DNA of 64,000 bases, from positions 248,001 through 312,000 of the IMG/VR virus record IMGVR_UViG_3300042308_001511, one strand, 5' to 3'. A program made the translations under genes and the position numbers. Below are positions 17,450 through 34,805 of the stretch, one piece after another (the stretch's first letter is position 1; the number at the start of each line of letters is the position of its first letter). The notes under the pieces were generated by a model. That model was not told the origin of the DNA and did not search any database. It was given only the letters and a program-made list of their open reading frames with translations.

Positions 17450-19174
17450 TTACATAAATTTCAAAGCACTCTCGAGACGTTTCATCTTCTCCATAGATTC
17501 CGACAAGTCTCCGTTCTTTTCCCACTCTTCCATTATCGCTACGGTGACGTTGTGATATGACATCGAAGACTTAAGGTTGAAATAGTCTGAAATCTTCCAT
17601 ATGTAGGTCGGTACTATCCTCTTATTGTCCTCAAGGTGATCCAACATCTTTATAGTTGCGGAGATTGTTGACAGCTGTTCGATTGTTTCGAACTTTTTGG
17701 AGAAGTAAGAGTTCTTGTAGTCACGGCTTATCCTTTCGAACTCCTTGTGAAGTTTCATAAACTCTACTACAAGTCTCTGATCTTTATCTTCCAATTGTTT
17801 CTTTATCTCTGTGATGTATTCGATGTACTCGGCGTTCTTCCTCTGATTGTTCGATATCATACTCTTAACTTTGTCTACGACCTGTCTCTCGTGATAGTCG
17901 GTGTCCTTTCCAGTCTCGACTGATTCGAGGTAATCATAGAGTTCGTTAATGAGTCTCTCAAATTCCCACCTGAATGTATCCTTCAACGAGAAGAGAAGGA
18001 AGTTGGTTCCGCCTAAAAGGTGTGGTGTTTTGTTGATCAGCTTACCGAGACCCTCTCTTAGGTTCAGGTCAGCTATCTTCTGTCTGTACCTCTCAAGGTT
18101 GGCTTTCCTTACACTGTCGTTGTCATTTAGTGCGACTGCTCCTGTCCTGGCTTCTTCCCTTTCCTTCTTGGTATCATCCGTGGATTTGAACTCACCTGCC
18201 TCAACGTCTGCAAAGTATTTGTCTGCGTCGAAAAGGATCACGTAGTCCGAATCCTTTATTTCGTCTTCATCGATTCCATGGGTTTGTTTTGAGATGCCGC
18301 CTCTGTATCCAGTACTGACTCTTAGGTTGTAGCCGTACGGCTCCTCGATTGGTTCGTTAGAGGTTATTTTGTAGAGCTCTATTTTGTAAGAACTCTCGTC
18401 GTTGTTAATTTTATTAAGTGATATGTGATGTATTCCCAGATCCTTCCATTTCGTTCCTGCTATACTCACACCCTGACCTCTGGTCTTCGTCGAACCGATA
18501 CCACTATTTATGAAGTGGTACTCACCGTTGTTATCTTTCCAGAATACACCAATCTTAACATCTGGGTGCCAAGACCTCCCATGCTTGAGTATAAGTCTGG
18601 TCTTACCAGGTACTATTTCGTTTTCTTCTATGAACTTCTCCTGTCCGGTTACAAAGTCAAACGCGTCGCCATTGGAAGGAAGTTTTATCCTCTCTGTCTC
18701 CCAGAATTTCGGACTTGATATCTCTCCGTAGTATTTACCGTCGGTGAAAGTGGTTCTCTTAAGTTCACCATCTTCACTCAACCAAAATTTGTAGAGTTTC
18801 TTATCACTTGCGTATTCAACGCCATCACCTTCACATTTCGTACATATTTTACTCGTAAATGATACCGCTTTCTTCGTGGTCGATGCGGTCTGGATATATC
18901 CATCACCGTTACACACAGGACATAATGTGTGCTCGTTACCACCGAGTCTGATTGTCCTCTGAGACTTTCTCTCGTATTTGAAGTATTTGTCACTCACCTC
19001 ACTCACAGGCATCTTACCAATTACCGTGGATGAAATATTCGTTGCCTCGACACAGATGGCTTTTATCGTGTCCAGTATTTCTCGTCTAGCATGTGATGTT
19101 ACGTTTCTGAGAGTCTTACCAAGTATTTTGGACTTGGTTGCCTCGAATATGTTGAATGCCTTTACGTGCTTCAT
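17450..19174 (-). CDS. N-tag large protein with DnaJ-like Zn-finger pair
   Basis: MKHVKAFNIFEA; CPVCNGDG..CTKCEGDG. Confidence 0.65.
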   Translation of the reverse strand: MKHVKAFNIFEATKSKILGKTLRNVTSHARREILDTIKAICVEATNISSTVIGKMPVSEVSDKYFKYERKSQRTIRLGGNEHTLCPVCNGDGYIQTASTTKKAVSFTSKICTKCEGDGVEYASDKKLYKFWLSEDGELKRTTFTDGKYYGEISSPKFWETERIKLPSNGDAFDFVTGQEKFIEENEIVPGKTRLILKHGRSWHPDVKIGVFWKDNNGEYHFINSGIGSTKTRGQGVSIAGTKWKDLGIHHISLNKINNDESSYKIELYKITSNEPIEEPYGYNLRVSTGYRGGISKQTHGIDEDEIKDSDYVILFDADKYFADVEAGEFKSTDDTKKEREEARTGAVALNDNDSVRKANLERYRQKIADLNLREGLGKLINKTPHLLGGTNFLLFSLKDTFRWEFERLINELYDYLESVETGKDTDYHERQVVDKVKSMISNNQRKNAEYIEYITEIKKQLEDKDQRLVVEFMKLHKEFERISRDYKNSYFSKKFETIEQLSTISATIKMLDHLEDNKRIVPTYIWKISDYFNLKSSMSYHNVTVAIMEEWEKNGDLSESMEKMKRLESALKFM

Positions 19175-19869
19175 TTCGTCTTTTTGTTTTTTATTATGAG
19201 CTCACCTAATACCTCGAGTCTTCCGACCTCTCTCTGGAACTCTATCTGATCCATATCAGTAGATATACTCCTGTAGGTCTCATCAAACTCCTTCTTAGCC
19301 TCTTCCACGTCGAACTTTCCAGAAGCAGCCTTCTTGTAGTATGGTAGTTTCACTTTGAAGTGATGCCACGTAAGAAGTGCTAGGCCACCTTTGTCGTGTG
19401 CGTTATTGGCAATCTTCTCTGCACCTGCCTCTCTTGTGTCTGCGAACTTACTAAGCTCGTCCGTCTTATCAACCTTCTCTTCTTTGGCTTCGTTGAACTT
19501 CTTCCAATTATTCAATATATCTTGATACATTTTCGGGTAAAGAGTTATAATCAGATTACTGGTCGATATTTTGAACTTAACTTCGAATCTCTCGCTGAGT
19601 CTGTCGGCGACCTGGATCGCGTTGTCCCTTATGTCGGCGATGATAGAGGTGAATTTTTCGAACTGGTCTCTGGTGATTTCGGTGTCCAAAGTTGGATTTA
19701 CGTCCATCTCATGAATGTTTAGGTTCCAGTTGAAATACTCGAAGTCCACTCTGTAGCCATACGTCGGTTGGCCGAGCGTGTCGGTAATCTCCTGTATGCT
19801 GTCCATAACCTCGCGGTCATCTTTTACCAATGCCTCAAATACCCTATCGAACCTTCTTATGTGTTTCAT
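19171..19869 (-). CDS. N-tag protein, two-module fusion (paralog of 19875..20522 in N-half)
   Basis: MKHIRRFDRVFEA; internal second tag ILNNWKKFNEA. Confidence 0.65.
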   Translation of the reverse strand: MKHIRRFDRVFEALVKDDREVMDSIQEITDTLGQPTYGYRVDFEYFNWNLNIHEMDVNPTLDTEITRDQFEKFTSIIADIRDNAIQVADRLSERFEVKFKISTSNLIITLYPKMYQDILNNWKKFNEAKEEKVDKTDELSKFADTREAGAEKIANNAHDKGGLALLTWHHFKVKLPYYKKAASGKFDVEEAKKEFDETYRSISTDMDQIEFQREVGRLEVLGELIIKNKKTK

Positions 19870-19874
19870 ATCTA

Positions 19875-20522
19875 TTAAACCAGTTTTATGTGTGTGTCTT
19901 CGTATTCGTCGTCGTTGACTCCTAAATAAACTTCATCGTTTCCTGCTTGTATGCTGAACATATCACCCAGTTCTTTACCCGGCTGGTCGAAACCTACCTT
20001 CTCAGCATCAAGCATGCTTTCGAAGTCCCATAGTTTCTCCTCTACGTCCTGCCCTGAGAACTTCAGTATTAAGTCTGTCGTGCTGTACTCCTCCTGTGGG
20101 TTTTCCTCAAAGCCTGCGAACTGAATACCATTGTCACTAGCCCATCTCTCGACCTCACTTCTCGATATGAGTATATTAAAGTCGTAGACGTCCTCCTCAA
20201 CACCTTTTATGAAATCGTAACCGTTGTTTTCTTTCAGCTCTATCATAAACTCCGCGGCAGTCATATTGAATAGTACTTTGTACCTGTCCGCCAGCCTGTC
20301 CGCTAACGTGAGTGCGTTGTCTTTTATGTTATTGTAGGTATCAATCATCTTCTCTAATCCGTCCTTGTCCAACCAACGTGAGCTAGCATCACCAATTGTC
20401 CATTTGTACCTGTTGTTGATTACTTCCGGATCACCAAACGCATCAGTGAACTCCTGCATACTGTCCCTAAGTTCGATATACTGTGAATTGTCGGACTCAT
20501 TGAATCTTCTTAAGTGTTTCAT
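19875..20522 (-). CDS. N-tag hypothetical protein
   Basis: MKHLRRFNES; shares DSxQExTDxxGxP..DNAxxxADRL with 19171. Confidence 0.65.
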   Translation of the reverse strand: MKHLRRFNESDNSQYIELRDSMQEFTDAFGDPEVINNRYKWTIGDASSRWLDKDGLEKMIDTYNNIKDNALTLADRLADRYKVLFNMTAAEFMIELKENNGYDFIKGVEEDVYDFNILISRSEVERWASDNGIQFAGFEENPQEEYSTTDLILKFSGQDVEEKLWDFESMLDAEKVGFDQPGKELGDMFSIQAGNDEVYLGVNDDEYEDTHIKLV

Positions 20523-22273
20523 TTCTTCTTACTCTTTTTCTTTTTAGAAAGTAAGCCTTCCTTTCTCCACTGACCAATCTGCTTACTAGCAACTGCCGAC
20601 TTCAGGAACTCCACGTTCTCCGGGTCCATAAGAAAGTGGTCAGAAACAACCAGATTCTTTATTCTAGCATCCGCAATTACATCCGATAATTTCCTACCCT
20701 CTGTGTCACTTTTCAACACTAAGTCTTGTAATTGCATACCCTCAAAGGATATGCCTGCTATGTCACAATTGATTAATGATAACTTATCCAATTTAGTACC
20801 TTCAAGTCCTTTTCTAAGATCCACCATATTAGTGCGGCACTCTCTTAGTTCTATGTCTCCGGTTCCAAATTTAGACAGTTCTGGCATATCAGAAATGTCA
20901 ATATTCACTATTGATAACTTTTCTAAATTGTATTTGAGGTCGAACAAGTTTGAGGGAACCTTCGGTGTAGATATAATCATTGTCTCGATCCTGTTATTCT
21001 CTCTAACAACCACATCACTCCAGTCAGTGCTCGGATTTATGTTTAAGAACCTACAATTTATACCTATTGTCCTTTTGTGTTGTATATTATGTAAAGTGTC
21101 ATGATAAGGACTATCTATATTATCATCTGATGATATATCCGGTGCGAATACATATACAGCACTCCTCGCATCCTCGTCTGTGGAGTCGAGATACCTTTTT
21201 ATACCTGCCACCTGCTCGACCATATTATATATGCCGTCATTCTCACCGTCACTCATACGTTGTGGGTAGACACGGTCGAAGAAAAGTCCTTTGCTTTCTG
21301 ATGGCATCACTATCGATCTTATGAAGAACCTTGCCAATGGAAGTTTTTCTGCTATTAGTTCACCATCACTATTATAAACAGGTGAGTCCAAATAGATGAA
21401 CGCTGGAACACTATTAGGATCAAATACATTAGCTAGTAAACTTCTTACATGTGATCCACCATATAATTCTTGACACGATGCATAAAATTTACTCACTGAT
21501 ATGTTGAGTATATCCTGTGGATTGTGTAGAATACTTACATAAACATCCTTATGAAAAACTTTGAGGTCTGCCTTATGTCCTTTCACTTCTGTGGCAAGCA
21601 TATTCTTTATGGACCCAATCTCAGAAGACGAGAAGTTCCTGTTAACAATCTGGTCTTCTCTACCTAGTTTCTTCATACAATCGTCGTAGTCCTTCGCAAA
21701 ACTATTAAGGTTATATAAACCGTTGTAGTAAGCAAACTCACCAGCAACTTTTTCCTCGAACTGAAACTGGCCATCCTCACCTTTTATTGGAACACCGAGC
21801 TCGTCTCTAACCATCTGTTTATCGGAACAGGTTGTCTTCACGTCAATTCTAGGTAGCACGTTGTTTGTCAGTGCGGCGATTTCTTCCAGGCCGATGTTAG
21901 TGAAATCTATACCATCTTCCATAAGTTCTGCAATTTTATCAGTCTCACTGGAATAATCATCTAATTCTAATGCCCAATTAAGTGCATCCGAAACCACCCT
22001 TATGAATTCGGTAGGTAAGTTATCAAAAACTAACTCAGCTTTTCGGATATTAGTTTTAAAGAATAAGTCTAATACACGGTATTTCTGCTCAGGTTCTAAT
22101 TTCCAATTACCCTGAATCGCTTTTATCTCGTCATTTGGTTCTATCTCTTCGTATTCGAGGTATTTTTTACCCCACCTTTTGGTAACTATTTCCTTTTGTT
22201 TAGGATTTATGACATCACCAATCTTAGCTTCAGTTAGGAACTGCTTTCTTCCTTTTATCCATTTCATATTCAT
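20519..22273 (-). CDS. N-tag protein with SC/AR/DRxY domain and C-terminal leucine-rich repeats
   Basis: MKWIKGRKQFLTEAK; YASCQ..LARFFIR..FFDRVYP; LEKLSIVNIDI, LDKLSLINCDI; TAATATATAA at 22277-22286. Confidence 0.65.
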   Translation of the reverse strand: MNMKWIKGRKQFLTEAKIGDVINPKQKEIVTKRWGKKYLEYEEIEPNDEIKAIQGNWKLEPEQKYRVLDLFFKTNIRKAELVFDNLPTEFIRVVSDALNWALELDDYSSETDKIAELMEDGIDFTNIGLEEIAALTNNVLPRIDVKTTCSDKQMVRDELGVPIKGEDGQFQFEEKVAGEFAYYNGLYNLNSFAKDYDDCMKKLGREDQIVNRNFSSSEIGSIKNMLATEVKGHKADLKVFHKDVYVSILHNPQDILNISVSKFYASCQELYGGSHVRSLLANVFDPNSVPAFIYLDSPVYNSDGELIAEKLPLARFFIRSIVMPSESKGLFFDRVYPQRMSDGENDGIYNMVEQVAGIKRYLDSTDEDARSAVYVFAPDISSDDNIDSPYHDTLHNIQHKRTIGINCRFLNINPSTDWSDVVVRENNRIETMIISTPKVPSNLFDLKYNLEKLSIVNIDISDMPELSKFGTGDIELRECRTNMVDLRKGLEGTKLDKLSLINCDIAGISFEGMQLQDLVLKSDTEGRKLSDVIADARIKNLVVSDHFLMDPENVEFLKSAVASKQIGQWRKEGLLSKKKKSKKK

Positions 22274-22352
22274 ATCTTATATATTATTTACATAACCTCT
22301 GAAAACTTCCAAAGATTTTATTATATTTGTAGTTAGTATAAACTTATTCATT

Positions 22353-22808
22353 ATGGACAAAATAGAATGCCAAGTGGTACTACTACCTACTGAAAAACAA
22401 TCAAATATAGTCTTCGTTAATCAAAAATTGGACTGGCTTGGTCAAAACCAACAAAAAAACGAAGAAAAGAAATTTGTATCATTCGTAGATGATAAAGGAA
22501 ATGTACTCGCGACTTCATTAAAAGAAGATGGATTCCCAAACATCGGTATTGACTTCCTATGGACATATGTAAAAGCAAACGGTAAAATAAATAGTGTATT
22601 CTTATTCGAAGATTTAAAAGACACCAATAATAAAGTAAGAACAAGAAACAATGGTGATGTTGTTGTAGCTAGATCTGACGAGAAAGAATTCACCGAGAAA
22701 GATGTAGTTGATATGTTATCTTATGCAATTGCACACTCTGGTATAAGCTCTAAAGAAATGAACCAAAAAATAGAAGAAACCATTAAATGGTTCAGATCCT
22801 ATAACTAA
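22353..22808 (+). CDS. Hypothetical protein
   Basis: TATATTTG at 22322-22329, terminator downstream. Confidence 0.6.
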   Translation: MDKIECQVVLLPTEKQSNIVFVNQKLDWLGQNQQKNEEKKFVSFVDDKGNVLATSLKEDGFPNIGIDFLWTYVKANGKINSVFLFEDLKDTNNKVRTRNNGDVVVARSDEKEFTEKDVVDMLSYAIAHSGISSKEMNQKIEETIKWFRSYN

Positions 22809-22812
22809 AAAC

Positions 22813-22844
22813 AAAAAAGGGACTATTTTTAGTACCTTTTTTTT
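22813..22844 (+). terminator. Intrinsic terminator
   Basis: AAAAAAGGGACTA-TTTT-TAGTACCTTTTTTTT. Confidence 0.6.
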
Positions 22845-22931
22845 ATCTCGTTTCAGCTACGTTACTATCATTCAAAGGATAACCTCCTCTTTCTCGAAGT
22901 CTACGTGAATGAAACACCAAAAAAAAATAAA

Positions 22932-23147
22932 ATGGAAGACATTACACTCTACAAACTCATAAAACAAACCTTTATCGAAGAAAACCCCACTGCCACCGTA
23001 CACGACGTCAGAGAAACCGCATACGACTCTATACTAATAATGTACACAACACCAGAATCATCACCCAAACTAAACATAAAAACAATAGAAACAACCCAAG
23101 CACTTGCCTGGGTCCGAGAAAAAAGACTAGGAGACATAGGACTCTAA
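22932..23147 (+). CDS. C-tag hypothetical protein
   Basis: ends VREKRLGDIGL; start moved to the first ATG. Confidence 0.6.
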   Translation: MEDITLYKLIKQTFIEENPTATVHDVRETAYDSILIMYTTPESSPKLNIKTIETTQALAWVREKRLGDIGL

Positions 23148-23180
23148 AATATAAACCGTATATTTGTAAAAAAAAAAGAA

Positions 23181-24131
23181 ATGATGATGAACAGAACCAC
23201 AAAAGAAGAATTCACACAGGAACTATCCGACTGGGCTAAAAACTGGGAAAACGATATCCAAAAGTCTCTAAAAAGAAACATCACACTTTATTTAAACGGA
23301 ATCGGCAATATGGGTGAATACCTGGCATCACTAATTTCCGGAAAAAAAGGCACCGCATCCGGCGGCAGCGGATTCGACCTATTACACGGCACAACCGCAG
23401 ATGAATCCAAATTCGCATGTCTTGTACAAGCAAAAAAATGCACAAACAAAAATTGCGAAACAAAATTCCTTTTCTTTATGCCAACCGATAAATGTGAAAA
23501 ATGTGGCAGCAACTTAGATTATATGAGCGACTCACGTTGGGGAATCGATTCAGATGCTGGCATAAAATACCACGAAACATTAGAATACTACTGGATGCAA
23601 ATACTTGAACCAGTAAAATACCACTACTCTTGTAGAGAATTCGTATACAAATGCTTTAGAATAGACGCTAAAGATAAAAACTTCTACGAATACCTAAAAA
23701 ACCAAAACGATAACGGATCCAAAAATAACTGCAACTTCCAACCATACTCCGTAGACTTCTACAGATCATCACCTGTACTTGTTGCAGAATTCAAAATAGA
23801 AATCGGTATCGAAACTAAAGTAACACCAACATTCTTCGACCTAGATAACCAACAACCCGAAGAATTCGATACAAAAATATTAGAAATAACACACTGCAAA
23901 AGAACTCTCGATGTATTAGGACTTGATGAAACCAAAATATACCCATACACTCAGAATAAAAATAAATCTTGGAGCAAACAAGATGTACTAGAAACAGGTT
24001 TCACTAAAGAAAGAGATTACCTAATCAAAATTATACTCGAAAACCTAAACGGTAAAAAACTTTCACAAATAGTTCCAATCAAACCAAAATCATTAGGCAA
24101 AGAAAGAGGAACAACAAGGAGAAAACTCTAA
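23181..24131 (+). CDS. Putative PD-(D/E)xK endonuclease with Zn ribbon (restriction-enzyme-like)
   Basis: MGEYLAS..SGFDLL..DESK; CTNKNC..CEKC; convergent with a DNA MTase. Confidence 0.5.
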   Translation: MMMNRTTKEEFTQELSDWAKNWENDIQKSLKRNITLYLNGIGNMGEYLASLISGKKGTASGGSGFDLLHGTTADESKFACLVQAKKCTNKNCETKFLFFMPTDKCEKCGSNLDYMSDSRWGIDSDAGIKYHETLEYYWMQILEPVKYHYSCREFVYKCFRIDAKDKNFYEYLKNQNDNGSKNNCNFQPYSVDFYRSSPVLVAEFKIEIGIETKVTPTFFDLDNQQPEEFDTKILEITHCKRTLDVLGLDETKIYPYTQNKNKSWSKQDVLETGFTKERDYLIKIILENLNGKKLSQIVPIKPKSLGKERGTTRRKL

Positions 24132-24157
24132 AAACAAATAAAACAAATAAAACAAAT

Positions 24158-24180
24158 AAGAGGCCAAACGGCCTCTTTTT
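24158..24180. terminator. Bidirectional terminator
   Basis: AAGAGGCC-AAAC-GGCCTCTTTTT between convergent genes. Confidence 0.75.
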
Positions 24181-24182
24181 CT

Positions 24183-25196
24183 TTATTCTAAATCCAATTC
24201 CGAATCCAATTCCGATTCCAAACCAGAATCCATCTTAATCAACTCCTTCTTACGCTTCTTACCCTTCTCCCTAACACTACCATCAAAGTAACCCTCCGGC
24301 AATTCAAAATTACTATCCTTTAACCTCTGTTCAACCAACCAAAAATACCTCTGATCTATATCAACTCCTAAATAGTCACGCCCTAACCTCTTAGCACCCA
24401 TTAATGAACTACCAGAACCCATAAAAAAATCTATCACCAAATCACCCTCTACCGAACTAGTCTTTATTATACGATCAACCAACATATCCGGCTTCTGTGT
24501 AGGATGAAACTTAGTACCCTTCTTAAAATAAAAAACAATATCGTCCCAAACATCCGTAAGTCCAAACTGCATATTGAATTTGTAAACCATATCATCATAC
24601 GCCGGTAACCTACCGTCAAATAAAATATCCAACTTAGTCCAATCCTCCCTCGTTGGCTGCATCAATGTCTTCTGTCTCAAACCGGCTATAGAACTCCACG
24701 TTCCACCTCCCCATGATGCCTTACCCAAATACTCATTTATCTCCTTTGGCGTAAGACCCTTCCTATCCTTCTCAACATTCAAAAGCTTCCTAATAACATC
24801 CGTAGAATCATAGTAAAATAAAAATGCACTCTCCGTAGTAGTTGGATACATCTTCAACTTAGAACTAACACGACCCGCCGCACTCTTCATACCCTTCCAA
24901 ATAACAACCTGCTGCTTAAACTTAAAACCATACCTCTCAAAAATAGGTATCAACATAGATAACTGATAAGGAAAACCAAAAACCCATACAGATCCAGAAT
25001 ATTTCGATATCCTCGAAACCTCACTAATCCATTTCTCACACCAATCTAAATACTCATCTATACTACGCCACTGCTTATCCCAATCCTCATTCACCACATT
25101 CATATACGGCGGATCTAATAAAAACAAATCACAGCTCCTGTCTGGTAACGTCGGCAAAAATTTGATTATGTCCGCGTTGTGAATCTCATTCCTCAT
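24183..25196 (-). CDS. Beta-class N6A/N4C DNA methyltransferase
   Basis: DLFLLDPPY before FHPTQKP and DFFMGSGS; helical insert in the TRD region. Confidence 0.9.
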   Translation of the reverse strand: MRNEIHNADIIKFLPTLPDRSCDLFLLDPPYMNVVNEDWDKQWRSIDEYLDWCEKWISEVSRISKYSGSVWVFGFPYQLSMLIPIFERYGFKFKQQVVIWKGMKSAAGRVSSKLKMYPTTTESAFLFYYDSTDVIRKLLNVEKDRKGLTPKEINEYLGKASWGGGTWSSIAGLRQKTLMQPTREDWTKLDILFDGRLPAYDDMVYKFNMQFGLTDVWDDIVFYFKKGTKFHPTQKPDMLVDRIIKTSSVEGDLVIDFFMGSGSSLMGAKRLGRDYLGVDIDQRYFWLVEQRLKDSNFELPEGYFDGSVREKGKKRKKELIKMDSGLESELDSELDLE

Positions 25197-25303
25197 ATTA
25201 CAATAAATTTATATTTATATTCAAAATAAACCTAATAGTTTCCCTCCAAAATTTATATTATAATACTAAAAAATCCATATATTCGTAAAAAAATAAAAAA
25301 AAC

Positions 25304-25801
25304 ATGAACGACTACACATACCAAAAATTCAAAGAAGACTTTGAAAACGCCCAAACACCCGAAGCTAAACAAGATGCCATCTTTACCTTGCTAGATTCCA
25401 ATATCGACATAAATGAATATAAAGAAGATATCCAAGAATATAAAGATCAACTCAAAGATCTGAAACATCAAATGGAAGTAGAAGAAGATACCTACATAAA
25501 CAAAGGCATCGATAACGGAACATTTACACTCTACACCTGTACACAAAACATCCATCAATACACCGCAGGAAACAACTACTACGTAAGTATCGATAACATC
25601 AAAACCAGATACACCGCAGCTCTTATCGGAGATGCCCCAGAATCTGAAATACCAAATGCAATAAAAGAATACTTCAACGGTCTAAAAGACCTAATCTGGA
25701 TCGTTACTGACAATGGATTAGGAACACTAAAAAAGAAAGAACTTGTAGTAGGTCTTAATTTTCACGACTTTGATTTTAATAAACACTTCACAAAACTATG
25801 A
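25304..25801 (+). CDS. Hypothetical protein
   Basis: TATATTCG at 25278-25285. Confidence 0.6.
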   Translation: MNDYTYQKFKEDFENAQTPEAKQDAIFTLLDSNIDINEYKEDIQEYKDQLKDLKHQMEVEEDTYINKGIDNGTFTLYTCTQNIHQYTAGNNYYVSIDNIKTRYTAALIGDAPESEIPNAIKEYFNGLKDLIWIVTDNGLGTLKKKELVVGLNFHDFDFNKHFTKL

Positions 25802-25861
25802 AATCAAAAAAATGTAGTATATTCGTAAAAACAAACTTTTCTTAAAACTAAAACGAAACCT

Positions 25862-26359
25862 ATGAAAACAATACTTACAATTATACTGACAACATTCACC
25901 TTATGTGTAAATGCTAATTATGTAATTAAAGATTCTACAACACTAAAAAATGAACTAAATGAACAAAAAATACAACTTAATTACTTATTTAGTTTACTTT
26001 CTAAAAATGAAGAACTAAATGGAATTTTACAAAAAATAAATGATCAAGAAAAATACAAATTTCTCAAAATAACATTCGGTCTAAACAAAAATGACGAACT
26101 CTTCAAAACTAATCAAAACATAAGTAGAATCAAATTCACTATCGCACAATATTTATACCGTTTACATTCTAAAATAGACACAACAAATATAGAAGAAGTG
26201 AAAAAAACTACACAAATACTCAAAAATATAAATATCATATCAACCAGTAATTATGATATGTTAGATAGTGATTTCACTGATAAACCCCTCAAAAAAACCA
26301 AATTGTATAAAGAACATAAAAATGATTACAGACAAAAAAGAATCAAAGAATTTTTCTAA
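25862..26359 (+). CDS. Secreted hypothetical protein
   Basis: Signal peptide MKTILTIILTTFTLCVNA; TATATTCG at 25818-25825. Confidence 0.65.
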   Translation: MKTILTIILTTFTLCVNANYVIKDSTTLKNELNEQKIQLNYLFSLLSKNEELNGILQKINDQEKYKFLKITFGLNKNDELFKTNQNISRIKFTIAQYLYRLHSKIDTTNIEEVKKTTQILKNINIISTSNYDMLDSDFTDKPLKKTKLYKEHKNDYRQKRIKEFF

Positions 26360-26377
26360 ACTAGATAACAAAAAAAA

Positions 26378-26425
26378 ATGCGAAAACTACTAACAATCAT
26401 CCTAACAACACTTGCGTTATACTAA
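26378..26425 (+). pseudogene. Signal-peptide remnant MRKLLTIILTTLALY*
   Basis: LTIILTT identical to 25862; stop falls inside palindrome copy 1. Confidence 0.5.
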
Positions 26426-26710
26426 AAATACCACGTTTTTTAGTATGTTTTTTTCTGAACCGTGCAAGCACCTATAAATTGTTATTTCAAAAGCGGCTAT
26501 ACCGTAAATGCAGGTACATGCATCGGTCTCTAGGAGCCTTGCCCTTACTGGCTTTCAGAGGGTCTCATTTTTTTCACTGGTTTTCACTTTTTTTCCACAG
26601 GTTTTGAGCTTGTAGGCGTTGGTAAATAGTTACTAGGTCCCATACAAAAAAAACGTGGGATTTTTGGCACCTCAATTTTGGATATACTAAAAATCACGTG
26701 TTTTTTAGTG
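26419..26710. other. Candidate replication origin / skew-switch locus
   Basis: Non-coding, flanked by palindromes at 26419 and 26642/26684; hairpins 26508-26523 and 26542-26562; + strand changes from C/A-rich to G/T-rich here. Confidence 0.5.
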
Positions 26711-26750
26711 CTTTATTTTTTTGAATATATACTCTAAAATAAACTGAGTT

Positions 26751-27011
26751 ATGCAGATATTGAAGACATATGAGGGATTCCACGGGTATGGACCACAAAA
26801 GAAGAGGATATTGATTGAACAAAAGATGAAGTTTTTGCCTTTATTGGAGCAGCTACCAGATGAGGCAGATTTTTCTGTTGTTCATCAGAGTGATAAGTGG
26901 ACTGCGATTTCCTTTATCAAAATGGGTGGGAATCCGAGTGAGTTTTACTTAGATAAGGTTTTAGACATACTAAAGGAGAATGGCATTGACACCTCATCAA
27001 TCAGTGAGTGA
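26751..27011 (+). CDS. N-tag hypothetical protein
   Basis: MQILKTYEGF; GAATATATAC at 26723-26732. Confidence 0.6.
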   Translation: MQILKTYEGFHGYGPQKKRILIEQKMKFLPLLEQLPDEADFSVVHQSDKWTAISFIKMGGNPSEFYLDKVLDILKENGIDTSSISE

Positions 27012-27095
27012 TCATTTTTTTATAAGATACTAAAAATCACGTGTTTTTTTGTATATTTCAAATTTATATACAAAAAAACACGTGATTTTTAGCAT

Positions 27096-27791
27096 TTATT
27101 TGTTTTTGAAATATGTTAGGCCGAATGTGAATGTGTGTATTGTTTTCACTTTTTGTATTCCGTAGTAGTTATAGACATCTGCCGCAGTTATTGCTAAATT
27201 GGTTGCTATTCTATAGCTTATTTTAGTTGTTCCGTAAATAATAACATTTTCGCCACCATTTATAACGGGTTGATAATAATATTCGCTAGTAAATGTAAGT
27301 TTTTGTAGTTCTCTTACTATTTTTAGACGGAAAGAGTGTCTTATATATGATATGTCTTTGTTATTTATTCTTTGCCACAATAGGGCGTATGAGTAATTGA
27401 TTTTGAAACCTATAATTGTATCTCTTCTACCATATCCGATACCGATTAGGTTATCTAAATTCAGATCACGTGTTAGTGAGTAAGTTGTTTGTATTGTAGT
27501 AAATGCGCTATTATTTTTATTAGAGTATGGTATAATTAGTTTATTAGAAAATTCATTACTAATTAGTTTACTGGAGTATGAGATATCGTGATTTAGGTTG
27601 TTATTTATTGATATTTTGCCTAATTCGATATTTGTTGTGGAGTTTATACTCCCGTTGTAAGTTTTCTTAGAGTTATCGATATAATTGAATCCGAGTGTAT
27701 TATTGAGGTTATATTTCTGTGAAAAGATTATTATTGGTAGTAGTAATACCAATATTGTTATTTTGATTTTGTGTAATATACTAAAATTCAC
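27096..27791 (-). CDS. Outer-membrane beta-barrel protein (DUF481-like)
   Basis: Signal-like N-terminus, alternating beta strands, YYQP, ends TFTFGLTYFKNK; GTG start lies in palindrome copy 6. Confidence 0.6.
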   Translation of the reverse strand: MNFSILHKIKITILVLLLPIIIFSQKYNLNNTLGFNYIDNSKKTYNGSINSTTNIELGKISINNNLNHDISYSSKLISNEFSNKLIIPYSNKNNSAFTTIQTTYSLTRDLNLDNLIGIGYGRRDTIIGFKINYSYALLWQRINNKDISYIRHSFRLKIVRELQKLTFTSEYYYQPVINGGENVIIYGTTKISYRIATNLAITAADVYNYYGIQKVKTIHTFTFGLTYFKNK

Positions 27792-27805
27792 GTGATTTTT
27801 TGTAT

Positions 27806-28453
27806 TTAGAATGTTAGTTTTAGAGATTTGAGTATATGGTTATCATTAGATCCTCCTGTTGCAGCGCCTATACCTAAGTAGTAATTGTTATTATCGAAAG
27901 TAAAGTTTGTATATGAATGTTGCTCTGTAACGGGTTTTGTGTTACTGGTTGAGTAATATACCTTAGCGGTGCCGTTTGAGTGGTTGTAATCGAGCCAATA
28001 GTATGCATTTTGTCTAAATGAGATGGCTTGTGTTTCTGTGCCTTGGCTGGTATTATTTTTGTACCAGGTAACATTGTTATTGGTGAATGTAAGGAATGTT
28101 ATTGCGTTTATGGCGGATGTAATTCTGCCTACGCCACCGCCGGATACTCCGTTAGAGTTATTTGTTTGTGTCCATTGGATTGAGAATCCGTCGGCACCTG
28201 TTCCGTCGCTACATTCGAAGTTCCATTGTAGAGAGAAGTTTCGGTTGTATTTTATTTTGTTTGATCTGTATATGTTACCTACGTTTGCGTTGGTGTTATT
28301 TGTTATGTATATCCAGTTGTTGGATATTCCATAAGTAGATACGAGGTTTAGACCTTGCGTAGATATAAAGTTATCGTAGTTGAAACTGTCGTTTGTTTTA
28401 CTTTTCGGTAGTTTGGTTAGAGGTCCAGAGAAGGATGATACTTTATTGAGCAT
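27806..28453 (-). CDS. L-type (legume/ConA-like) lectin domain protein
   Basis: GADGFS, YWLDYN, YLGIGAATGG..DNHILKS; late motif 28474-28483. Confidence 0.75.
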   Translation of the reverse strand: MLNKVSSFSGPLTKLPKSKTNDSFNYDNFISTQGLNLVSTYGISNNWIYITNNTNANVGNIYRSNKIKYNRNFSLQWNFECSDGTGADGFSIQWTQTNNSNGVSGGGVGRITSAINAITFLTFTNNNVTWYKNNTSQGTETQAISFRQNAYYWLDYNHSNGTAKVYYSTSNTKPVTEQHSYTNFTFDNNNYYLGIGAATGGSNDNHILKSLKLTF

Positions 28454-28574
28454 TTTTATTTATATGGTTTCTATTATATATTATAATAGATTATACTAAA
28501 AAACACGTGAATTTTAGTATATTATTTTATAGAGGTGCCAAAGGGGATGTGATTTTTGGCACCTTTTGTATTGT

Positions 28575-28883
28575 TTAGATGTTATTGAAATTGGCAACGA
28601 CGTTATTTATGATTTTGTTTTTGATGTATTCTTTGCCTTGTTCGTCTGTGAATTTTTCAATTTCTGGGTTTGACATAGCATCTATGGTTGTTTGTAAGGC
28701 AGCGGTTGTCACTTCCATTACGGTCAGGTGGAATACTTTGGCGAAGTTATTTTTCAGGATCTCGCGGTTGGCTTCCATAGTTTCGGTTCCTTCGTCGAAT
28801 AGTTCTAAAAGGAATTCTACTTGTTCGTTTACTGGTTTAGCTTTGATTGTGTCGGCTTGTTCTTGTGTTAGGATAGTTTTCAT
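28575..28883 (-). CDS. Hypothetical protein
   Basis: TATATTTG at 28905-28912. Confidence 0.6.
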   Translation of the reverse strand: MKTILTQEQADTIKAKPVNEQVEFLLELFDEGTETMEANREILKNNFAKVFHLTVMEVTTAALQTTIDAMSNPEIEKFTDEQGKEYIKNKIINNVVANFNNI

Positions 28884-28924
28884 TGTTTAGGTTTTAGTTT
28901 TAGACAAATATACGTACGTAGTTC

Positions 28925-28984
28925 TTATAAAGAAAATAAGACTAATGTCACAATAACGATAACGATTACGATAATAATAGGCAT
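28925..28984 (-). CDS. 19-aa hydrophobic peptide MPIIIVIVIVIVTLVLFSL
   Basis: Short ORF with TATATTTG promoter at 29008-29015. Confidence 0.35.
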   Translation of the reverse strand: MPIIIVIVIVIVTLVLFSL

Positions 28985-29090
28985 GGCTTTATGTTTTTAG
29001 TGTTTCTCAAATATACTCATTCTTTGGGTACCAGGTACTAACAGGTGCTAAAAAAGACGTATTTTTTAGTATATTATTATTTTATAAGAT

Positions 29091-29215
29091 AGGTTGGAGT
29101 CTACCCTCTGCGTGCTGGTAGTGCACGAACCCTTTTCCCGGCTTTCCCAGTGAGTTAGTATGTGAAGTTATGGTCCCATCGTTTCTTTTGTTAAAGATAC
29201 GGAACTTTCCTGGAT
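29091..29215. ncRNA. Non-coding repeat copy 1 (structured RNA or DNA element)
   Basis: Four identical blocks (14, 22, 21, 11 nt) shared with 33328-33454; indels break frame. Confidence 0.55.
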
Positions 29216-29247
29216 GAATGGCTAAAAAAGACGTATTTTTTGGCATA

Positions 29248-30042
29248 TTATTTTGATTTGGGTCTGATAGAGATACCGAATAGTAGTTGTGTACTTTGTG
29301 TGTATACGCCGTATGCGAGTTTCTGGTTATCGATTTGTCCTATAGCATGCCTTAGATCTGTTCTGAAACTGATACGTTCTGAGATTGGTATTTTGATACC
29401 TATGTCTGCGAGTAGTCCCGCATCGACTCCAATGGTCTGCATTGGCTCTATATCGGATCGTATACCGTTGGTTGTGTTTGTATGATACTCTGATATAGGA
29501 AGAGAGAGAAAACCTCCCAGGTCGAGCGAGAGTGCCGTTTTGGTGCCATCTGTCTGTATTCCTATCATAAGTGGGATTGTGATATAGTTTAGCCTGGAGT
29601 ATCCTTCTGATACGACCCATGTTTTTGATTGGTATCCATAGTTTTCGGTTTGTGTCCAGAATTCGGAGTAGTAGGATCTTCCCTTGCTTTCTATGAAGAG
29701 TCCAGACTTCACGTTTATCCCTGGATTGACTGTACTTATCATTGCACCTGCGGAGTATCCCCAGATGTTGCCGAATTGTATTTGAAAGTCTGGTATGTTT
29801 CCGTAGAATTCTTCGTATCCGTTCTGGTCGTATCTGAACCAGTTTATGCTTGGTCCAATCTGTGGTGTTATTTCGACTGGGTACTTAGTACTTACTATGG
29901 TACCGAGAGCGGTTACAACACCTGCGGTTATGTAGCTGTTTACTGGATCCCAGGTTACTTTCTGTACTGGTGTATATGATTGTGCGATAAGTTTGGTGGA
30001 TAGCAGCACGATAAGTGCTAAAAAGTACGTGTTTTTTGGCAT
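29248..30042 (-). CDS. Outer-membrane beta-barrel, porin/PorT-like family
   Basis: Signal peptide; LNYITIPLMIG, DAGLLADIG, DLRHAIG, LLFGISI; ATG lies in palindrome copy 11. Confidence 0.7.
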   Translation of the reverse strand: MPKNTYFLALIVLLSTKLIAQSYTPVQKVTWDPVNSYITAGVVTALGTIVSTKYPVEITPQIGPSINWFRYDQNGYEEFYGNIPDFQIQFGNIWGYSAGAMISTVNPGINVKSGLFIESKGRSYYSEFWTQTENYGYQSKTWVVSEGYSRLNYITIPLMIGIQTDGTKTALSLDLGGFLSLPISEYHTNTTNGIRSDIEPMQTIGVDAGLLADIGIKIPISERISFRTDLRHAIGQIDNQKLAYGVYTQSTQLLFGISIRPKSK

Positions 30043-30044
30043 AT

Positions 30045-30812
30045 TTATTTTTCTAAGTTTTCTTTTACTCCAATTTGGTTCAGTCTATCAACACACATAT
30101 CATAATACATAGGATTGTTTTCAATTAGTATAAAATTCCTTTTTGTGTTTTTCGCGGCTAATCCTGTAGTCCCACAACCAGCACAATTATCTAAAATAAT
30201 ATTATCTTCATTACTATATGTTTTTATTAGATACTCACACAATTCTTGACTTTTTTGTGTTGGATGTATCGGTGGATGTGGTCTATCAAAACTTAAAATA
30301 CTTTTAGGATATTTTTTAGTATCACCCTTTCTATTTGCCGAAGGATTTTTATGACTATCAAATTTACCATAATTATTATTACCTAAATTACCATCTTTAT
30401 ATTTAGTACCCATACCATGTAAAGGTTCACCCTCAGTAAATTGTGGATTATATATTGGTAATTTTTTATAAAACACTATGATATCCTCATGGTTTCTTAA
30501 AGGCATTCTTTTAGCATTTAAAAATCCACTTCCCCTATTACCTTTATCCCAAATAAGATTATATCTATGTATTTTTTCATTAGATAACATCAACTTAGCA
30601 GTGAATTTATCCTGTCCAAATAAAATTATAGGTGAATTTTCTTTAGTTATCCTATTATATTGTTCCCAAAGTAATTCTAAATTTATGACTGAATCCCATT
30701 TGTTTTTGGTAACACCATAAGGTAAATCACATAATATCATATCAATATACTTATCAGGGATAGATTTCATTACTTCTAAACAATCCCCTAAATATGTTTT
30801 ATTTATTTCCAT
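30045..30812 (-). CDS. Beta-class DNA methyltransferase
   Basis: DMILCDLPYG, HPTQK, DNCAGCGTT. Confidence 0.9.
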   Translation of the reverse strand: MEINKTYLGDCLEVMKSIPDKYIDMILCDLPYGVTKNKWDSVINLELLWEQYNRITKENSPIILFGQDKFTAKLMLSNEKIHRYNLIWDKGNRGSGFLNAKRMPLRNHEDIIVFYKKLPIYNPQFTEGEPLHGMGTKYKDGNLGNNNYGKFDSHKNPSANRKGDTKKYPKSILSFDRPHPPIHPTQKSQELCEYLIKTYSNEDNIILDNCAGCGTTGLAAKNTKRNFILIENNPMYYDMCVDRLNQIGVKENLEK

Positions 30813-33515: not shown

Positions 33516-34805
33516 TTAGTTTTTTATGGCTTTCAGTGATATTGTTTGTCTGTCCTTTGTTATGTTCAGAAAATAAGTCCCTGGTTGCAGCATCTGTGTA
33601 TCGATTGAGATTGTGCCTCCGTCGAATACCTGGATTGTTTTCCCTTCGATGGTTGTAAATGTACCGTATGATCCAGGTGTCAAGCTAATCTCTATCCTAT
33701 CGTTGAAAGGGTTCGGCCAGAACAACTCTTTAAGTTGTTGTTCACGTAAAGATAAGCTAGATGAGTCTTTTAGTCCTGTATTGTCCCACAAACACTTCAC
33801 CGAGTCGAACTGGTAGACGTAGATAGTGTCTGTAGGCTGTACCGGTTTTGTGCCTTTGTTCTCCCATACGAGTGTTTTGATGTTGAACTGGTGGTTGTCC
33901 CAACAGGTTGTATCTGCAGGCCTGGTCGGTATTGCTCTTACAGAGTCCAGCCAGAAATATCCTGCGTACGGGTGGTACATCTGACATACGGGAGTATTAT
34001 CGTTACAATCAGATAGGAACTTACCAGATACTATAATACTATCGAGGTGAACGATTCCTGCGACCTGTGCTGCTGCGTAGTTACAGATCTTATACTGAGT
34101 GTTGTCGTAGCTGATATAGTAGCCTGAGCAGTCTGTAAAGCCGAGTGCTACGTAGTTGGTGATTGGTCCTGGTTCTGTACCTGGTACAATCATTATAGGA
34201 ACACCGGTTGGTTTGTATTCTTTGTTATTGGTTCCAACAACGGAACAACCGTTAGCGTCGGTGAATACGACGTATAGTTTAGGATTGTATAGGTTCATAA
34301 AGCAACCACCTTGGTTTGGACCGTAGTATTGGGTGAATGTGTTGTCCCAGTTCTTTGTGTATACTTTATCAATCATAGCATAGTTAGCTTTATCGACTGA
34401 AAAGTAAATACAGGTTTGTTGGTTTTGAGGGTTCTGTGGATCTGGCATCTGTATAACATTGAAGGAAGTGACCTTCAGTGAGTCACAGTCTTTAGTGACA
34501 GCGATAGAGATGTTTATTAGTGTGTCCAACGAGAATTTGGCTAAGCCGTCATCTTTCTTCTTACCGAGTACCCAGTAGGTGCCTGGTACGAGTTCGCCTT
34601 TTGTTTTAAAGTTTGTGGCCAGTTCGGATCCCTGTATTGCAGCGTCTACGACTCTATAGATTGACCACTTTTTAATGTTTGTTCCTGTGGTGTCGACTGA
34701 TACGGCACCATCATTGAAGTTTGGTCCAGTAGCGTTTGTGACCTTTACTTGTGAGTTTGCTAGGAATGCTAGCATAAATGAGATTGTAGCTATTAGTTTT
34801 TTCAT
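33516..34805 (-). CDS. Secreted protein with T9SS type A C-terminal sorting domain
   Basis: Signal peptide; C-term FWPNPFNDRIEI..TIEGKTI..IDTQMLQPGTYFLNI..LKAIKN. Confidence 0.8.
   Translation of the reverse strand: MKKLIATISFMLAFLANSQVKVTNATGPNFNDGAVSVDTTGTNIKKWSIYRVVDAAIQGSELATNFKTKGELVPGTYWVLGKKKDDGLAKFSLDTLINISIAVTKDCDSLKVTSFNVIQMPDPQNPQNQQTCIYFSVDKANYAMIDKVYTKNWDNTFTQYYGPNQGGCFMNLYNPKLYVVFTDANGCSVVGTNNKEYKPTGVPIMIVPGTEPGPITNYVALGFTDCSGYYISYDNTQYKICNYAAAQVAGIVHLDSIIVSGKFLSDCNDNTPVCQMYHPYAGYFWLDSVRAIPTRPADTTCWDNHQFNIKTLVWENKGTKPVQPTDTIYVYQFDSVKCLWDNTGLKDSSSLSLREQQLKELFWPNPFNDRIEISLTPGSYGTFTTIEGKTIQVFDGGTISIDTQMLQPGTYFLNITKDRQTISLKAIKN

What the first reader, a model, noticed from the sequence alone, without database searches (positions are those of the whole stretch)
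22800..30042. Sharp GC/AT-skew inversion at about 26.5 kb marks a probable replication origin
Seen: from about 22.8 to 26.4 kb the + strand is strongly C/A-rich regardless of gene direction (+ genes use C/A-ending codons, the - strand MTase 24183 uses G/T-ending codons). From about 26.7 to 30 kb the pattern is mirrored (+ gene 26751 is G/T-rich, - genes are C/A-rich). The switch is a ~220-bp non-coding stretch with hairpins and TTTTCAC/TTTTCCACAG repeats between palindromes. Established: a C-rich to G-rich switch on the + strand is the polarity of a bidirectional origin. The bias fades with distance, which is unusual and suggests prolonged single-strandedness near this site.
Basis: partly seen in the sequence, partly recalled or inferred. 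Interest (0 to 1): 0.68.

Follow-up and report, generated by a model that had tools for sequence, protein, structure and literature searches.

The report
Strand-skew flip marking probable phage origin
In a 344-kb freshwater jumbo phage, one short non-coding spot separates two stretches whose DNA strands carry opposite and unusually strong mutation biases whichever way the genes point; this is best read as the footprint of replication forks leaving a replication origin, though that has not been shown directly.

Summary
At third codon positions the + strand GC skew is -0.43 to -0.81 for six consecutive genes (22353-26359), on both strands. It is +0.44 to +0.77 for the genes from 26751 to 30042. 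The flip (26434-26598) is the largest orientation-independent skew jump in the 344-kb genome (0 of 2000 shuffles reach it). Comparison with unskewed orthologs shows the bias comes from strand-specific A>G and C>T transitions, a deamination-type signature. A related phage has the same flip between the same anchor genes, with different cargo genes between them. Its negative domain runs at least 12-17 kb and fades with distance. In this genome the sharp left border is a mosaic or rearrangement junction, and a detached piece of the old left domain now lies at genome 196-203 kb. Right of the centre the + strand stays G/T-rich for about 70 kb. The polarity fits diverging replication forks. However, the site is not the genome-wide GC-skew minimum (66 kb), most nearby genes would meet the forks head-on, the core sequence is poorly conserved, no initiator gene is adjacent, and no raw reads were available to test for coverage peaks or molecule ends. 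Verdict: probable origin-like fork-divergence point (about 0.55).

The parts
22353..26359 (.). Left arm. The + strand is A/C-rich (the - strand G/T-rich) at third codon positions in six genes of both orientations.
   Evidence: + strand GC3 skew is -0.43 to -0.81 and keto3 skew is -0.31 to -0.73.
22905..23147 (+). 80-aa anchor gene, conserved in relatives L014-L016 and L026.
   Evidence: 85-91% nucleotide identity. In L026 it abuts the 165-aa gene directly.
23181..24131 (+). Restriction-endonuclease-like cargo gene (weak MamI-like hit). Its coding strand is A/C-rich.
   Evidence: 42% amino-acid identity to the L008 ortholog. Synonymous T>C 35 against C>T 1.
24183..25196 (-). N6/N4 DNA methyltransferase cargo gene. 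Its coding strand is G/T-rich.
   Evidence: 74% amino-acid identity to the L008 ortholog. Synonymous A>G 60 against G>A 0, and C>T 18 against T>C 7.
25304..25801 (+). 165-aa anchor gene next to the centre, conserved in L014-L016, L026 and L027.
   Evidence: 87-94% nucleotide identity. GC3 skew is -0.80 here and -0.83 in L014.
26360..26750 (.). Non-coding centre where the skew flips. Candidate origin region.
   Evidence: cumulative keto skew minimum at 26434, cumulative GC skew minimum at 26598; no convincing ORF; no Rfam family.
26379..26424 (+). 15-codon relic ORF (MRKLLTIILTTLALY*) resembling the signal peptide of the gene at 25862. It is truncated at the palindrome.
   Evidence: leader comparison.
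26421..26446 (.). Hairpin palindrome at the left edge of the centre. Population variants join here.
26449..26465 (+). TTTTTTCTGAACCGTGC motif, shared with the centre of L014, where it is tandemly duplicated.
26563..26604 (+). Two 21-bp tandem repeats (TCTCATTTTTTTCACTGGTTT / TCACTTTTTTTCCACAGGTTT). Iteron-like and T-rich.
   Evidence: family D1.
26684..26709 (.). CACGTG-core palindrome at the right edge of the centre.
26751..30042 (.). Right arm. The + strand is G/T-rich at third positions in genes of both orientations. A CACGTG palindrome sits at each gene border.
29248..30042 (-). Outer-membrane beta-barrel (PF13568-type) anchor gene, conserved in L014-L019.
   Evidence: 82-87% identity.
30045..30812 (-). 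Low-GC (27%) methyltransferase just outside the domain, without the right-arm skew. It looks like recent cargo.
17450..22273 (-). Unskewed block that has been moved and inverted relative to relatives. It forms the sharp left border.

Best explanation
The non-coding centre at about 26.4-26.75 kb (genome about 274.5 kb) is a point from which replication forks diverge. It is an origin, or an origin-like initiation zone, of this T4-like-equipped jumbo phage. Right of it the + strand is the lagging-strand template, and left of it the - strand is. That strand spends more time single-stranded and accumulates C>T and A>G deaminations. Over evolutionary time this makes it G/T-rich whichever way the genes point. 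The bias is strongest next to the centre for one or more of three inferred reasons: fork direction is fully polarised there, lagging-strand synthesis may start late, or the fast-evolving cargo genes parked there reach mutational equilibrium. Further away, recombination-dependent initiation and selection on core genes dilute the bias. What is shown: the strand-specific transition signature, its independence from gene orientation, its uniqueness in the genome, and its conservation at the locus. What is inferred: that replication, rather than some other polar process, is the cause.
For: The skew is orientation-independent and mirror-symmetric, and the jump is the genome's largest. Against the unskewed, co-oriented L008 orthologs, the - strand MTase shows A>G 60/0 and C>T 18/7, and the + strand REase shows the complementary T>C 35/1 and G>A 5/1. 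This is the A- and C-deamination signature described for single-stranded exposure (PMC3269012). The related phage contig (L014/L028) has the same flip between the same anchors with different cargo. Its negative domain is at least 12-17 kb long, fades with distance, and affects genes on both strands. Right of the centre the + strand keto3 skew stays at +0.16 to +0.23 for 10-55 kb in genes of both orientations. Low-GC cargo that looks recent carries little skew. The centre is contiguous in assemblies from independent studies. The phage encodes its own PolB, a DnaB-like helicase and a RecA/UvsX-like recombinase. That is compatible with T4-style origin firing followed by recombination-dependent replication (PMC3016281). 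Skew jumps are an accepted signature of efficient origins (PMC11874978).
Against: The total cumulative GC skew has its global minimum at 66 kb, next to the replisome genes, not here, although that curve follows gene orientation. Most genes on both sides point toward the centre, so they would meet the forks head-on. Apart from a hairpin and one short motif, the core sequence is poorly conserved between the window and L014. No initiator or replication gene is adjacent. The left border in this genome is abrupt, falling between two genes 80 bp apart, which needs a mosaic-junction explanation. A parsimony test on recent substitutions was inconclusive. There is no direct replication evidence.
Confidence: 0.55

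Rival explanations
1. The flip is a structural junction, not a functional site. A segment that had acquired a strong uniform strand bias elsewhere, or in the opposite orientation, was inverted or recombined next to another such segment. The two arms then simply carry inherited skew of opposite sign.
For: These genomes are heavily mosaic, and skew travels with moved segments. A piece of the left domain now lies at genome 196-203 kb and is still negative. Pieces at 325-327 kb are inverted and carry the inverted sign. The right arm is bracketed by palindrome copies at 26422 and 30018, exactly at the two turning points. A truncated gene relic abuts the palindrome at the flip. Population variants join at these palindromes. 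The genome as a whole is + strand keto-rich, so only the left arm is truly anomalous.
Against: The same flip, with the same anchors and orientation, is present in the relative L014/L028, so any inversion would have to be ancestral. The skew is strongest on both sides next to the centre, which an inversion of a uniformly skewed genome (about +0.2) does not produce. The R and M genes are convergent here yet share one strand-level bias, while their co-oriented L008 orthologs are unskewed. So the bias arose on the present arrangement.
Confidence: 0.15
2. The centre is the packaged genome's terminus or concatemer junction (pac site or terminal-repeat boundary). Recombination-dependent replication primed from invading ends sends forks outward from it, giving origin-like polarity without a classical origin.
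For: The polarity argument is the same as for an origin. The phage has a recombinase and its own replisome. T4-type phages rely on recombination-dependent initiation (PMC3016281). Hairpins and structural variation cluster at 26419-26454. IMG/VR classes the record as linear with no end repeats, so its true ends are unknown.
Against: No read starts or ends could be examined. Resection of ends would expose the opposite strand to the one that is biased (inference). Contigs from several samples run through the site, although that is also expected for terminally redundant genomes.
Confidence: 0.12
3. A non-replicative polar process causes the bias. Candidates are persistent R-loops or pervasive divergent transcription from the centre, or an enzyme (an ssDNA deaminase of host or phage) acting on one strand of this cargo hot spot.
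For: The signature consists of transitions only (A>G, C>T), as expected for deaminases or exposed non-template DNA. The strongest zone coincides with a hypervariable cargo region holding R-M, methyltransferase and surface-protein genes. T4 origins themselves use R-loops (PMC3016281).
Against: Each gene has its own host-type TAnnTTTG promoter, and most genes are transcribed toward the centre, not away from it. Their coding strands are therefore A/C-rich, the opposite of the known non-template C>T bias. The bias extends at least 17 kb to the left in the relative and about 70 kb to the right here, across genes of both orientations, which is too far for R-loops. No deaminase gene was seen near the locus.
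Confidence: 0.1

Closest known systems
Replication-associated skew switch at bacterial and viral origins (Lobry-type GC skew), and skew S-jumps at efficient mammalian origins
   Same: There is an upward jump of strand skew (C/A-rich to G/T-rich on the + strand), it is independent of gene orientation, and the skew declines with distance as fork polarity is diluted (PMC11874978).
   Different: The amplitude is far higher (GC3 skew about -0.8 to +0.8). The strongest zone is only about 4-7 kb per side. The site is not the global extremum of the total GC skew. Nearby genes are oriented head-on.
Vertebrate mitochondrial strand asymmetry under strand-displacement replication
   Same: The same two transitions (C>T and A>G) accumulate on the strand exposed as single-stranded DNA. 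The coding strand is A/C-rich in most genes, and the opposite-strand gene is G/T-rich. The skew magnitude is comparable (PMC3269012).
   Different: This is a 344-kb dsDNA phage with a PolB, helicase and recombinase replisome. The pattern is mirror-symmetric around one point rather than genome-wide on one strand. Strand displacement is not shown here.
Bacteriophage T4 origins (oriF/oriG: R-loop-primed, followed by recombination-dependent replication)
   Same: The phage encodes its own replisome and recombinase. A localised initiation site whose influence on fork direction fades as recombination-dependent initiation takes over would explain a local skew (PMC3016281).
   Different: No sequence similarity to T4 origins was tested or expected. 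No promoter plus unwinding-element architecture is demonstrated. To my knowledge T4 itself is not known for such a local skew (own knowledge, not checked here).

Membership tests
Skew-defined replication origin | Sign change of strand skew with origin polarity, independent of gene orientation. | tested here: met
   The + strand GC3 skew goes from -0.8 to +0.77 across 26.4-26.75 kb, for genes on both strands in each arm. It is the largest jump in the genome.
Skew-defined replication origin | Global extremum of the cumulative skew of the whole replicon. | tested here: not met
   The cumulative GC skew minimum is at 66,367 and the maximum at 243,320. The site at about 274.5 kb is only a local minimum. 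The total skew follows gene orientation, and the genome is rearranged.
Skew-defined replication origin | The switch is conserved at the homologous locus in relatives. | tested here: met
   L014/L028 flips between the 165-aa and OMP anchors. This rests on one related lineage (L014, L015 and L016 are near-identical).
Skew-defined replication origin | Origin-type sequence elements (iterons, an AT-rich unwinding element, an adjacent initiator gene). | tested here: inconclusive
   A 21-bp tandem repeat, T-rich tracts and hairpins are present. No initiator gene is adjacent. The core is poorly conserved compared with L014.
Skew-defined replication origin | Physical evidence of initiation (copy-number peak, fork-direction switch). 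| not testable with these tools
   All 20 runs that hold the locus are kept as assembled contigs, and contig depth is not informative.
Single-strand deamination asymmetry (mitochondrial type) | Excess of C>T and A>G on one strand, with the complementary changes on the other. | tested here: met
   R-M pair against L008; 151-aa gene against L009: 18 vs 6; the neighbouring 584-aa and 574-aa control genes show 34 vs 32 and 20 vs 20.
Single-strand deamination asymmetry (mitochondrial type) | The asymmetry is still active in recent substitutions. | tested here: inconclusive
   In the left arm, T>C is 0.094 against A>G 0.030 per base (expected direction), but C>T 0.116 exceeds G>A 0.047 (opposite). 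In the right arm the rates are about equal. Counts are small.
Inversion breakpoint | Relatives exist with the un-inverted arrangement. | tested here: not met
   All available relatives share the window's relative orientation of the anchors. Only a few relatives were available.
Assembly join | The junction is supported by only one assembly. | tested here: not met
   Contigs from X2 (26097-27369, identical), X3 and X8 span the centre, and L014-L016 span their homologous centre.

The most novel reading that the evidence does not exclude
A few kilobases on each side of this phage origin stay single-stranded unusually long (strand-displacement-like initiation with delayed lagging-strand synthesis, or repeated abortive firing). 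This gives mitochondria-grade deamination asymmetry in a dsDNA phage. It would turn the origin-proximal cargo bay, with its palindrome-bounded cassettes of R-M, methyltransferase and surface-protein genes, into a zone of accelerated, directional sequence evolution.
Probability: 0.2. Interest if true: 0.8.

Novelty: new variant of a known kind. Interest (0 to 1): 0.6.

Why it matters
If it is correct, this gives a sequence-only handle on where and how an uncultivated family of freshwater jumbo phages starts replication. It would also show that a dsDNA phage can carry strand asymmetry as extreme as animal mitochondria, concentrated around one site. The skew also acts as a fossil record: segments keep their sign after being moved, which exposed several rearrangements here. 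In addition, the strongest zone coincides with a hot spot of cargo turnover (restriction-modification and surface genes), which suggests a link between replication initiation, single-stranded DNA and accessory-gene evolution that can be tested experimentally.

Tried and rejected
- Rfam on 22-30.5 kb found only spurious hairpin (miRNA-type) hits below threshold.
- Folding the centre as ssDNA gave a weak z-score of -1.87.
- blastn of the island against reference phages found no match.
- IMG/VR scans led nowhere. The 584-aa flank protein found no relative. The CACGTG palindrome had 0 hits. The TTTTTTCTGAACCRTGC motif gave 6 hits, all unrelated.
- The sigma-70-type promoter scan was not above chance (44 found, 37.9 expected). 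Bacteroidota-type TAnnTTTG boxes were more informative.
- I first suspected an imported small replicon, because of the sharp borders at gene edges. I dropped this reading because a relative shows the same polarity at the same locus with other cargo and a much longer left domain. No Rep or integrase gene is present.
- Convergent sense transcription was rejected. Coding strands of the majority genes are A/C-rich, and minority-orientation genes share the strand-level bias.
- Resection at a double-strand break at the centre was rejected on polarity, since it would expose the other strand (inference).
- No homology was found between the two arms, so the locus is not a diverged inverted duplication, apart from short shared leaders.
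- The parsimony test of recent substitutions was inconclusive.
- P0057's context had no DNA available.
- The 66-kb cumulative GC-skew minimum was considered as a rival origin. There is no orientation-independent jump there.


Full report
**Context.** The window is bases 248,001-312,000 of a 344,083-bp IMG/VR virus record. The record is linear, has no end repeats and is estimated 91% complete. The gene content points to a jumbo phage of a Bacteroidota host. This includes a T9SS C-terminal sorting domain, OMP_b-brl_2 and lectin-like proteins, and host-type TAnnTTTG -7 boxes 20-25 nt upstream of start codons. The same DNA is held by lake and river metagenomes from 12 studies. The phage encodes a family-B polymerase (about 60.7 kb), a DnaB-like helicase (55.4-56.2 kb) and a RecA/UvsX-like protein (about 73 kb).

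- In 1-kb windows the + strand GC skew falls to -0.48 and the AT skew rises to +0.34 between 22.5 and 26.5 kb. They then flip to +0.31 and -0.28 up to 30 kb.
- At third codon positions the + strand GC skew of the genes from 22353 to 26359 is -0.43, -0.71, -0.69, -0.81, -0.80 and -0.68. The -0.81 value belongs to the - strand methyltransferase.
- For the genes from 26751 to 30042 it is +0.50, +0.68, +0.77, +0.64 and +0.44, again for both orientations. The genome-wide sd is 0.23.
- Eight of the nine genes in the genome with |GC3 skew| >= 0.6 lie here. All 11 genes with + strand keto3 skew <= -0.3 lie in the left arm or in a fragment that once belonged to it.
- The jump at the centre is the largest in the genome: +0.96 in keto3 and +1.35 in GC3, using 5-gene windows. 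None of 2000 gene-order shuffles exceeded 0.56.
- The centre is 26360-26750. It has no convincing ORF and no Rfam family. It holds two palindromes (26421-26446 and 26684-26709) and two 21-bp tandem repeats at 26563-26604.

In this genome the bias forms plateaus (keto skew about -0.25 to -0.34, then +0.2 to +0.3). These end abruptly at gene borders: the cumulative curves turn at 22352-22356 and at 30039. The + ORF 28579-28890 is the antisense shadow of the real gene 28575-28883 on the - strand, which has its own promoter and a leader homologous to that of the gene at 25862.

**Mutational signature.** The restriction-modification pair in the left arm has orthologs in another viral contig, L008 (MTase 74% and REase 42% amino-acid identity). 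There the two genes are co-oriented and have ordinary composition. I compared synonymous third positions of identical residues, taking L008 as the reference.
- The window's - strand MTase has A>G 60 against G>A 0, and C>T 18 against T>C 7.
- The + strand REase has T>C 35 against C>T 1, and G>A 5 against A>G 1.

Both therefore report the same events on one physical strand: A>G and C>T on the - strand, with few transversions. This is the signature attributed to deamination of A and C in DNA exposed as a single strand (PMC3269012). R and M are convergent here yet share the strand-level bias, so the bias arose on the present arrangement.

**Relatives.** The flank gene and the OMP gene have many homologs in metagenome assemblies. 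A 60-kb ENA scaffold (L014/L028; L015 and L016 are near-identical) carries three anchors at 85-93% nucleotide identity: the 80-aa gene (22905), the 165-aa gene (25304) and the OMP (29248). They have the same relative orientation as in the window, with different cargo between them: two methyltransferases, a 397-aa gene and a low-GC acetyltransferase-like gene.

In window orientation its + strand keto3 skew is -0.36 to -0.75 for the genes next to the centre. It declines to about -0.1 to -0.25 at 12-17 kb, for genes on both strands. It flips to +0.45 to +0.50 on the other side. Low-GC cargo genes, in both genomes, carry little skew, as expected for recent arrivals. L026 lacks the R-M pair between the 80-aa and 165-aa genes. 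A contig in run X3 shows the same deletion form alongside the full form. The pair is therefore exchangeable cargo.

**Why the borders are sharp here.**
- Compared with L009-L013, the block at window 17453-22799 has been moved about 20 kb and inverted. Its old slot, between an M50-like gene and a 200-aa gene, is closed at genome 246.9 kb.
- The genes that lie left of the 80-aa anchor in L028 (243-aa, 150-aa, GlnRS-type synthetase, 116-aa) sit at genome 197-203 kb in this genome, in the same orientation. They form its only other negative-skew domain.
- Other L028 genes lie inverted at 325-327 kb, with the inverted sign. Skew therefore travels with segments.
- The left border is a mosaic junction. 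The 151-aa gene at 22353 shows G>A/T>C 18 against 6 relative to L009, while the adjacent 584-aa and 574-aa genes show none (34 vs 32, 20 vs 20).
- On the right, about 6 kb of genome-specific cargo (30-36 kb) interrupts the skew. The skew then continues at +0.16 to +0.23 for 10-55 kb in genes of both orientations.

**Interpretation.** The polarity is that of forks leaving the centre, with the lagging-strand template being the strand that gains G and T. Skew jumps of this kind are used to call origins (PMC11874978). A T4-like mode would explain a bias that is maximal near the site and diluted further away. In that mode, origin firing is followed by recombination-dependent initiation in either direction (PMC3016281). 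This step is inference.

Several observations weigh against the origin reading:
- The total cumulative GC skew has its minimum at 66,367 and its maximum at 243,320. However, that curve follows gene orientation, and there is no orientation-independent jump at 66 kb.
- Most genes on both sides would be head-on to the forks.
- The core of the centre is poorly conserved compared with L014, beyond a hairpin and the TTCTGAACC motif.
- No initiator gene is adjacent.
- A test on recent substitutions was inconclusive.

**Rivals.**
- An ancestral inversion or mosaic junction of pre-skewed segments fits the palindromes at both turning points of the right arm (26422 and 30018). It also fits the gene relic at 26379-26424. 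It does not explain why the skew peaks on both sides of the centre, or why it is shared by the relative.
- A packaged terminus or concatemer junction that seeds recombination-dependent forks gives the same polarity. It cannot be excluded, because all runs are kept as contigs.
- Transcription or R-loops, or a strand-specific deaminase, fit the transition signature. They do not fit the gene orientations or the tens-of-kilobases extent.

**Physical checks.** Contigs from independent studies run through the centre: X2 covers 26097-27369 with an identical sequence, and X3 and X8 also span it. It is therefore not an assembly join. Structural variants join at the palindromes (25292 to 26419; 28897 back to 28496; a strand flip between 26371 and 26454), which marks them as recombination-prone cassette borders. 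I followed the operators' note on read laying (5,901 letters laid). No alternative genetic code was used.

**Verdict.** This is a real, extreme and conserved strand-bias flip. I read it as a probable origin-like fork-divergence point (confidence about 0.55). The sharp outer borders in this genome come from rearrangement and cargo turnover, not from the mechanism itself.

Noticed in passing
window 26422-30039 (copies at 26422, 26687, 27030, 27071, 27781, 28496, 29048, 29222, 30018): A 22-bp palindrome, CTAAAAA-N-CACGTG-N-TTTTTAG, has 9 of its 10 genome copies in the right arm and sits at every gene border there. Contig variants from other samples join exactly at these sites (25292 to 26419; 28897 back to 28496). 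This suggests cassette boundaries or recombination hot spots. The motif has no exact match elsewhere in IMG/VR.
   Followed up: partly
window 23148-25291: The restriction-modification pair (MamI-like REase candidate plus N6/N4 MTase) is present or absent among near-identical strains (X3 joint 23147 to 25292). It is also missing in L026. Its orthologs in L008 are co-oriented, whereas here the two genes are convergent.
   Followed up: yes
window 17453-22799; genome 246.9 kb, 196-203 kb, 325-327 kb: Several rearrangements are seen relative to related phages. A 5-kb block has been moved and inverted. A fragment of the ancestral left skew domain is now 70 kb away and still negatively skewed. Other fragments are inverted and carry the inverted skew.
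   Followed up: yes
whole genome (G000), especially 60-110, 170-240 and 280-344 kb: The + strand is G/T-rich at third codon positions for genes of both orientations over most of the genome (mean +0.07 and +0.09). This hints at predominantly one-directional fork movement genome-wide.
   Followed up: partly
genome 55-73 kb and 66,367 / 243,320: The total cumulative GC skew has its minimum beside the replisome genes (helicase, PolB, recombinase) and its maximum at 243 kb. This tracks the switch in gene orientation and shows no orientation-independent jump. It remains a weaker alternative candidate for an origin.
   Followed up: partly
window 26379-26424: A 15-codon ORF relic (MRKLLTIILTTLALY*) is homologous to the signal-peptide start of the gene at 25862 and is cut off at the palindrome. 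The leaders of 25862 (+) and 28883 (-) are also homologous in mirror orientation.
   Followed up: partly
window 25862-26359, 27096-28453, 29248-30042, 33516-34805: The phage carries several envelope-type cargo genes: a signal-peptide protein, a putative beta-barrel protein, a legume-lectin-like protein, an OMP_b-brl_2 protein and a protein with a T9SS sorting domain.
   Followed up: no
window 30045-30812 and L014 5229-6038: Very low-GC (27%) cargo genes (a methyltransferase here, an acetyltransferase-like gene in L014) sit inside or beside the skewed zone with little skew. They look like recent acquisitions.
   Followed up: partly
P0009 (660,742-bp JGI contig), P0038 (642-kb contig), P0016 (172-kb contig): Homologs of the 584-aa flank gene lie on very long contigs. 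The 660-kb contig is about twice this genome's length, so it could be a much larger relative or a dimer assembly. This was not examined.
   Followed up: no
genome 199,529-201,130; L028 8265-9869; L010-L013: The phage group encodes a GlnRS/GluRS-type aminoacyl-tRNA synthetase (98.7% identical between this genome and L028). It also encodes ClpP, HU, guanylate kinase, MTHFR and RNase H. No tRNA genes were found in the window.
   Followed up: no
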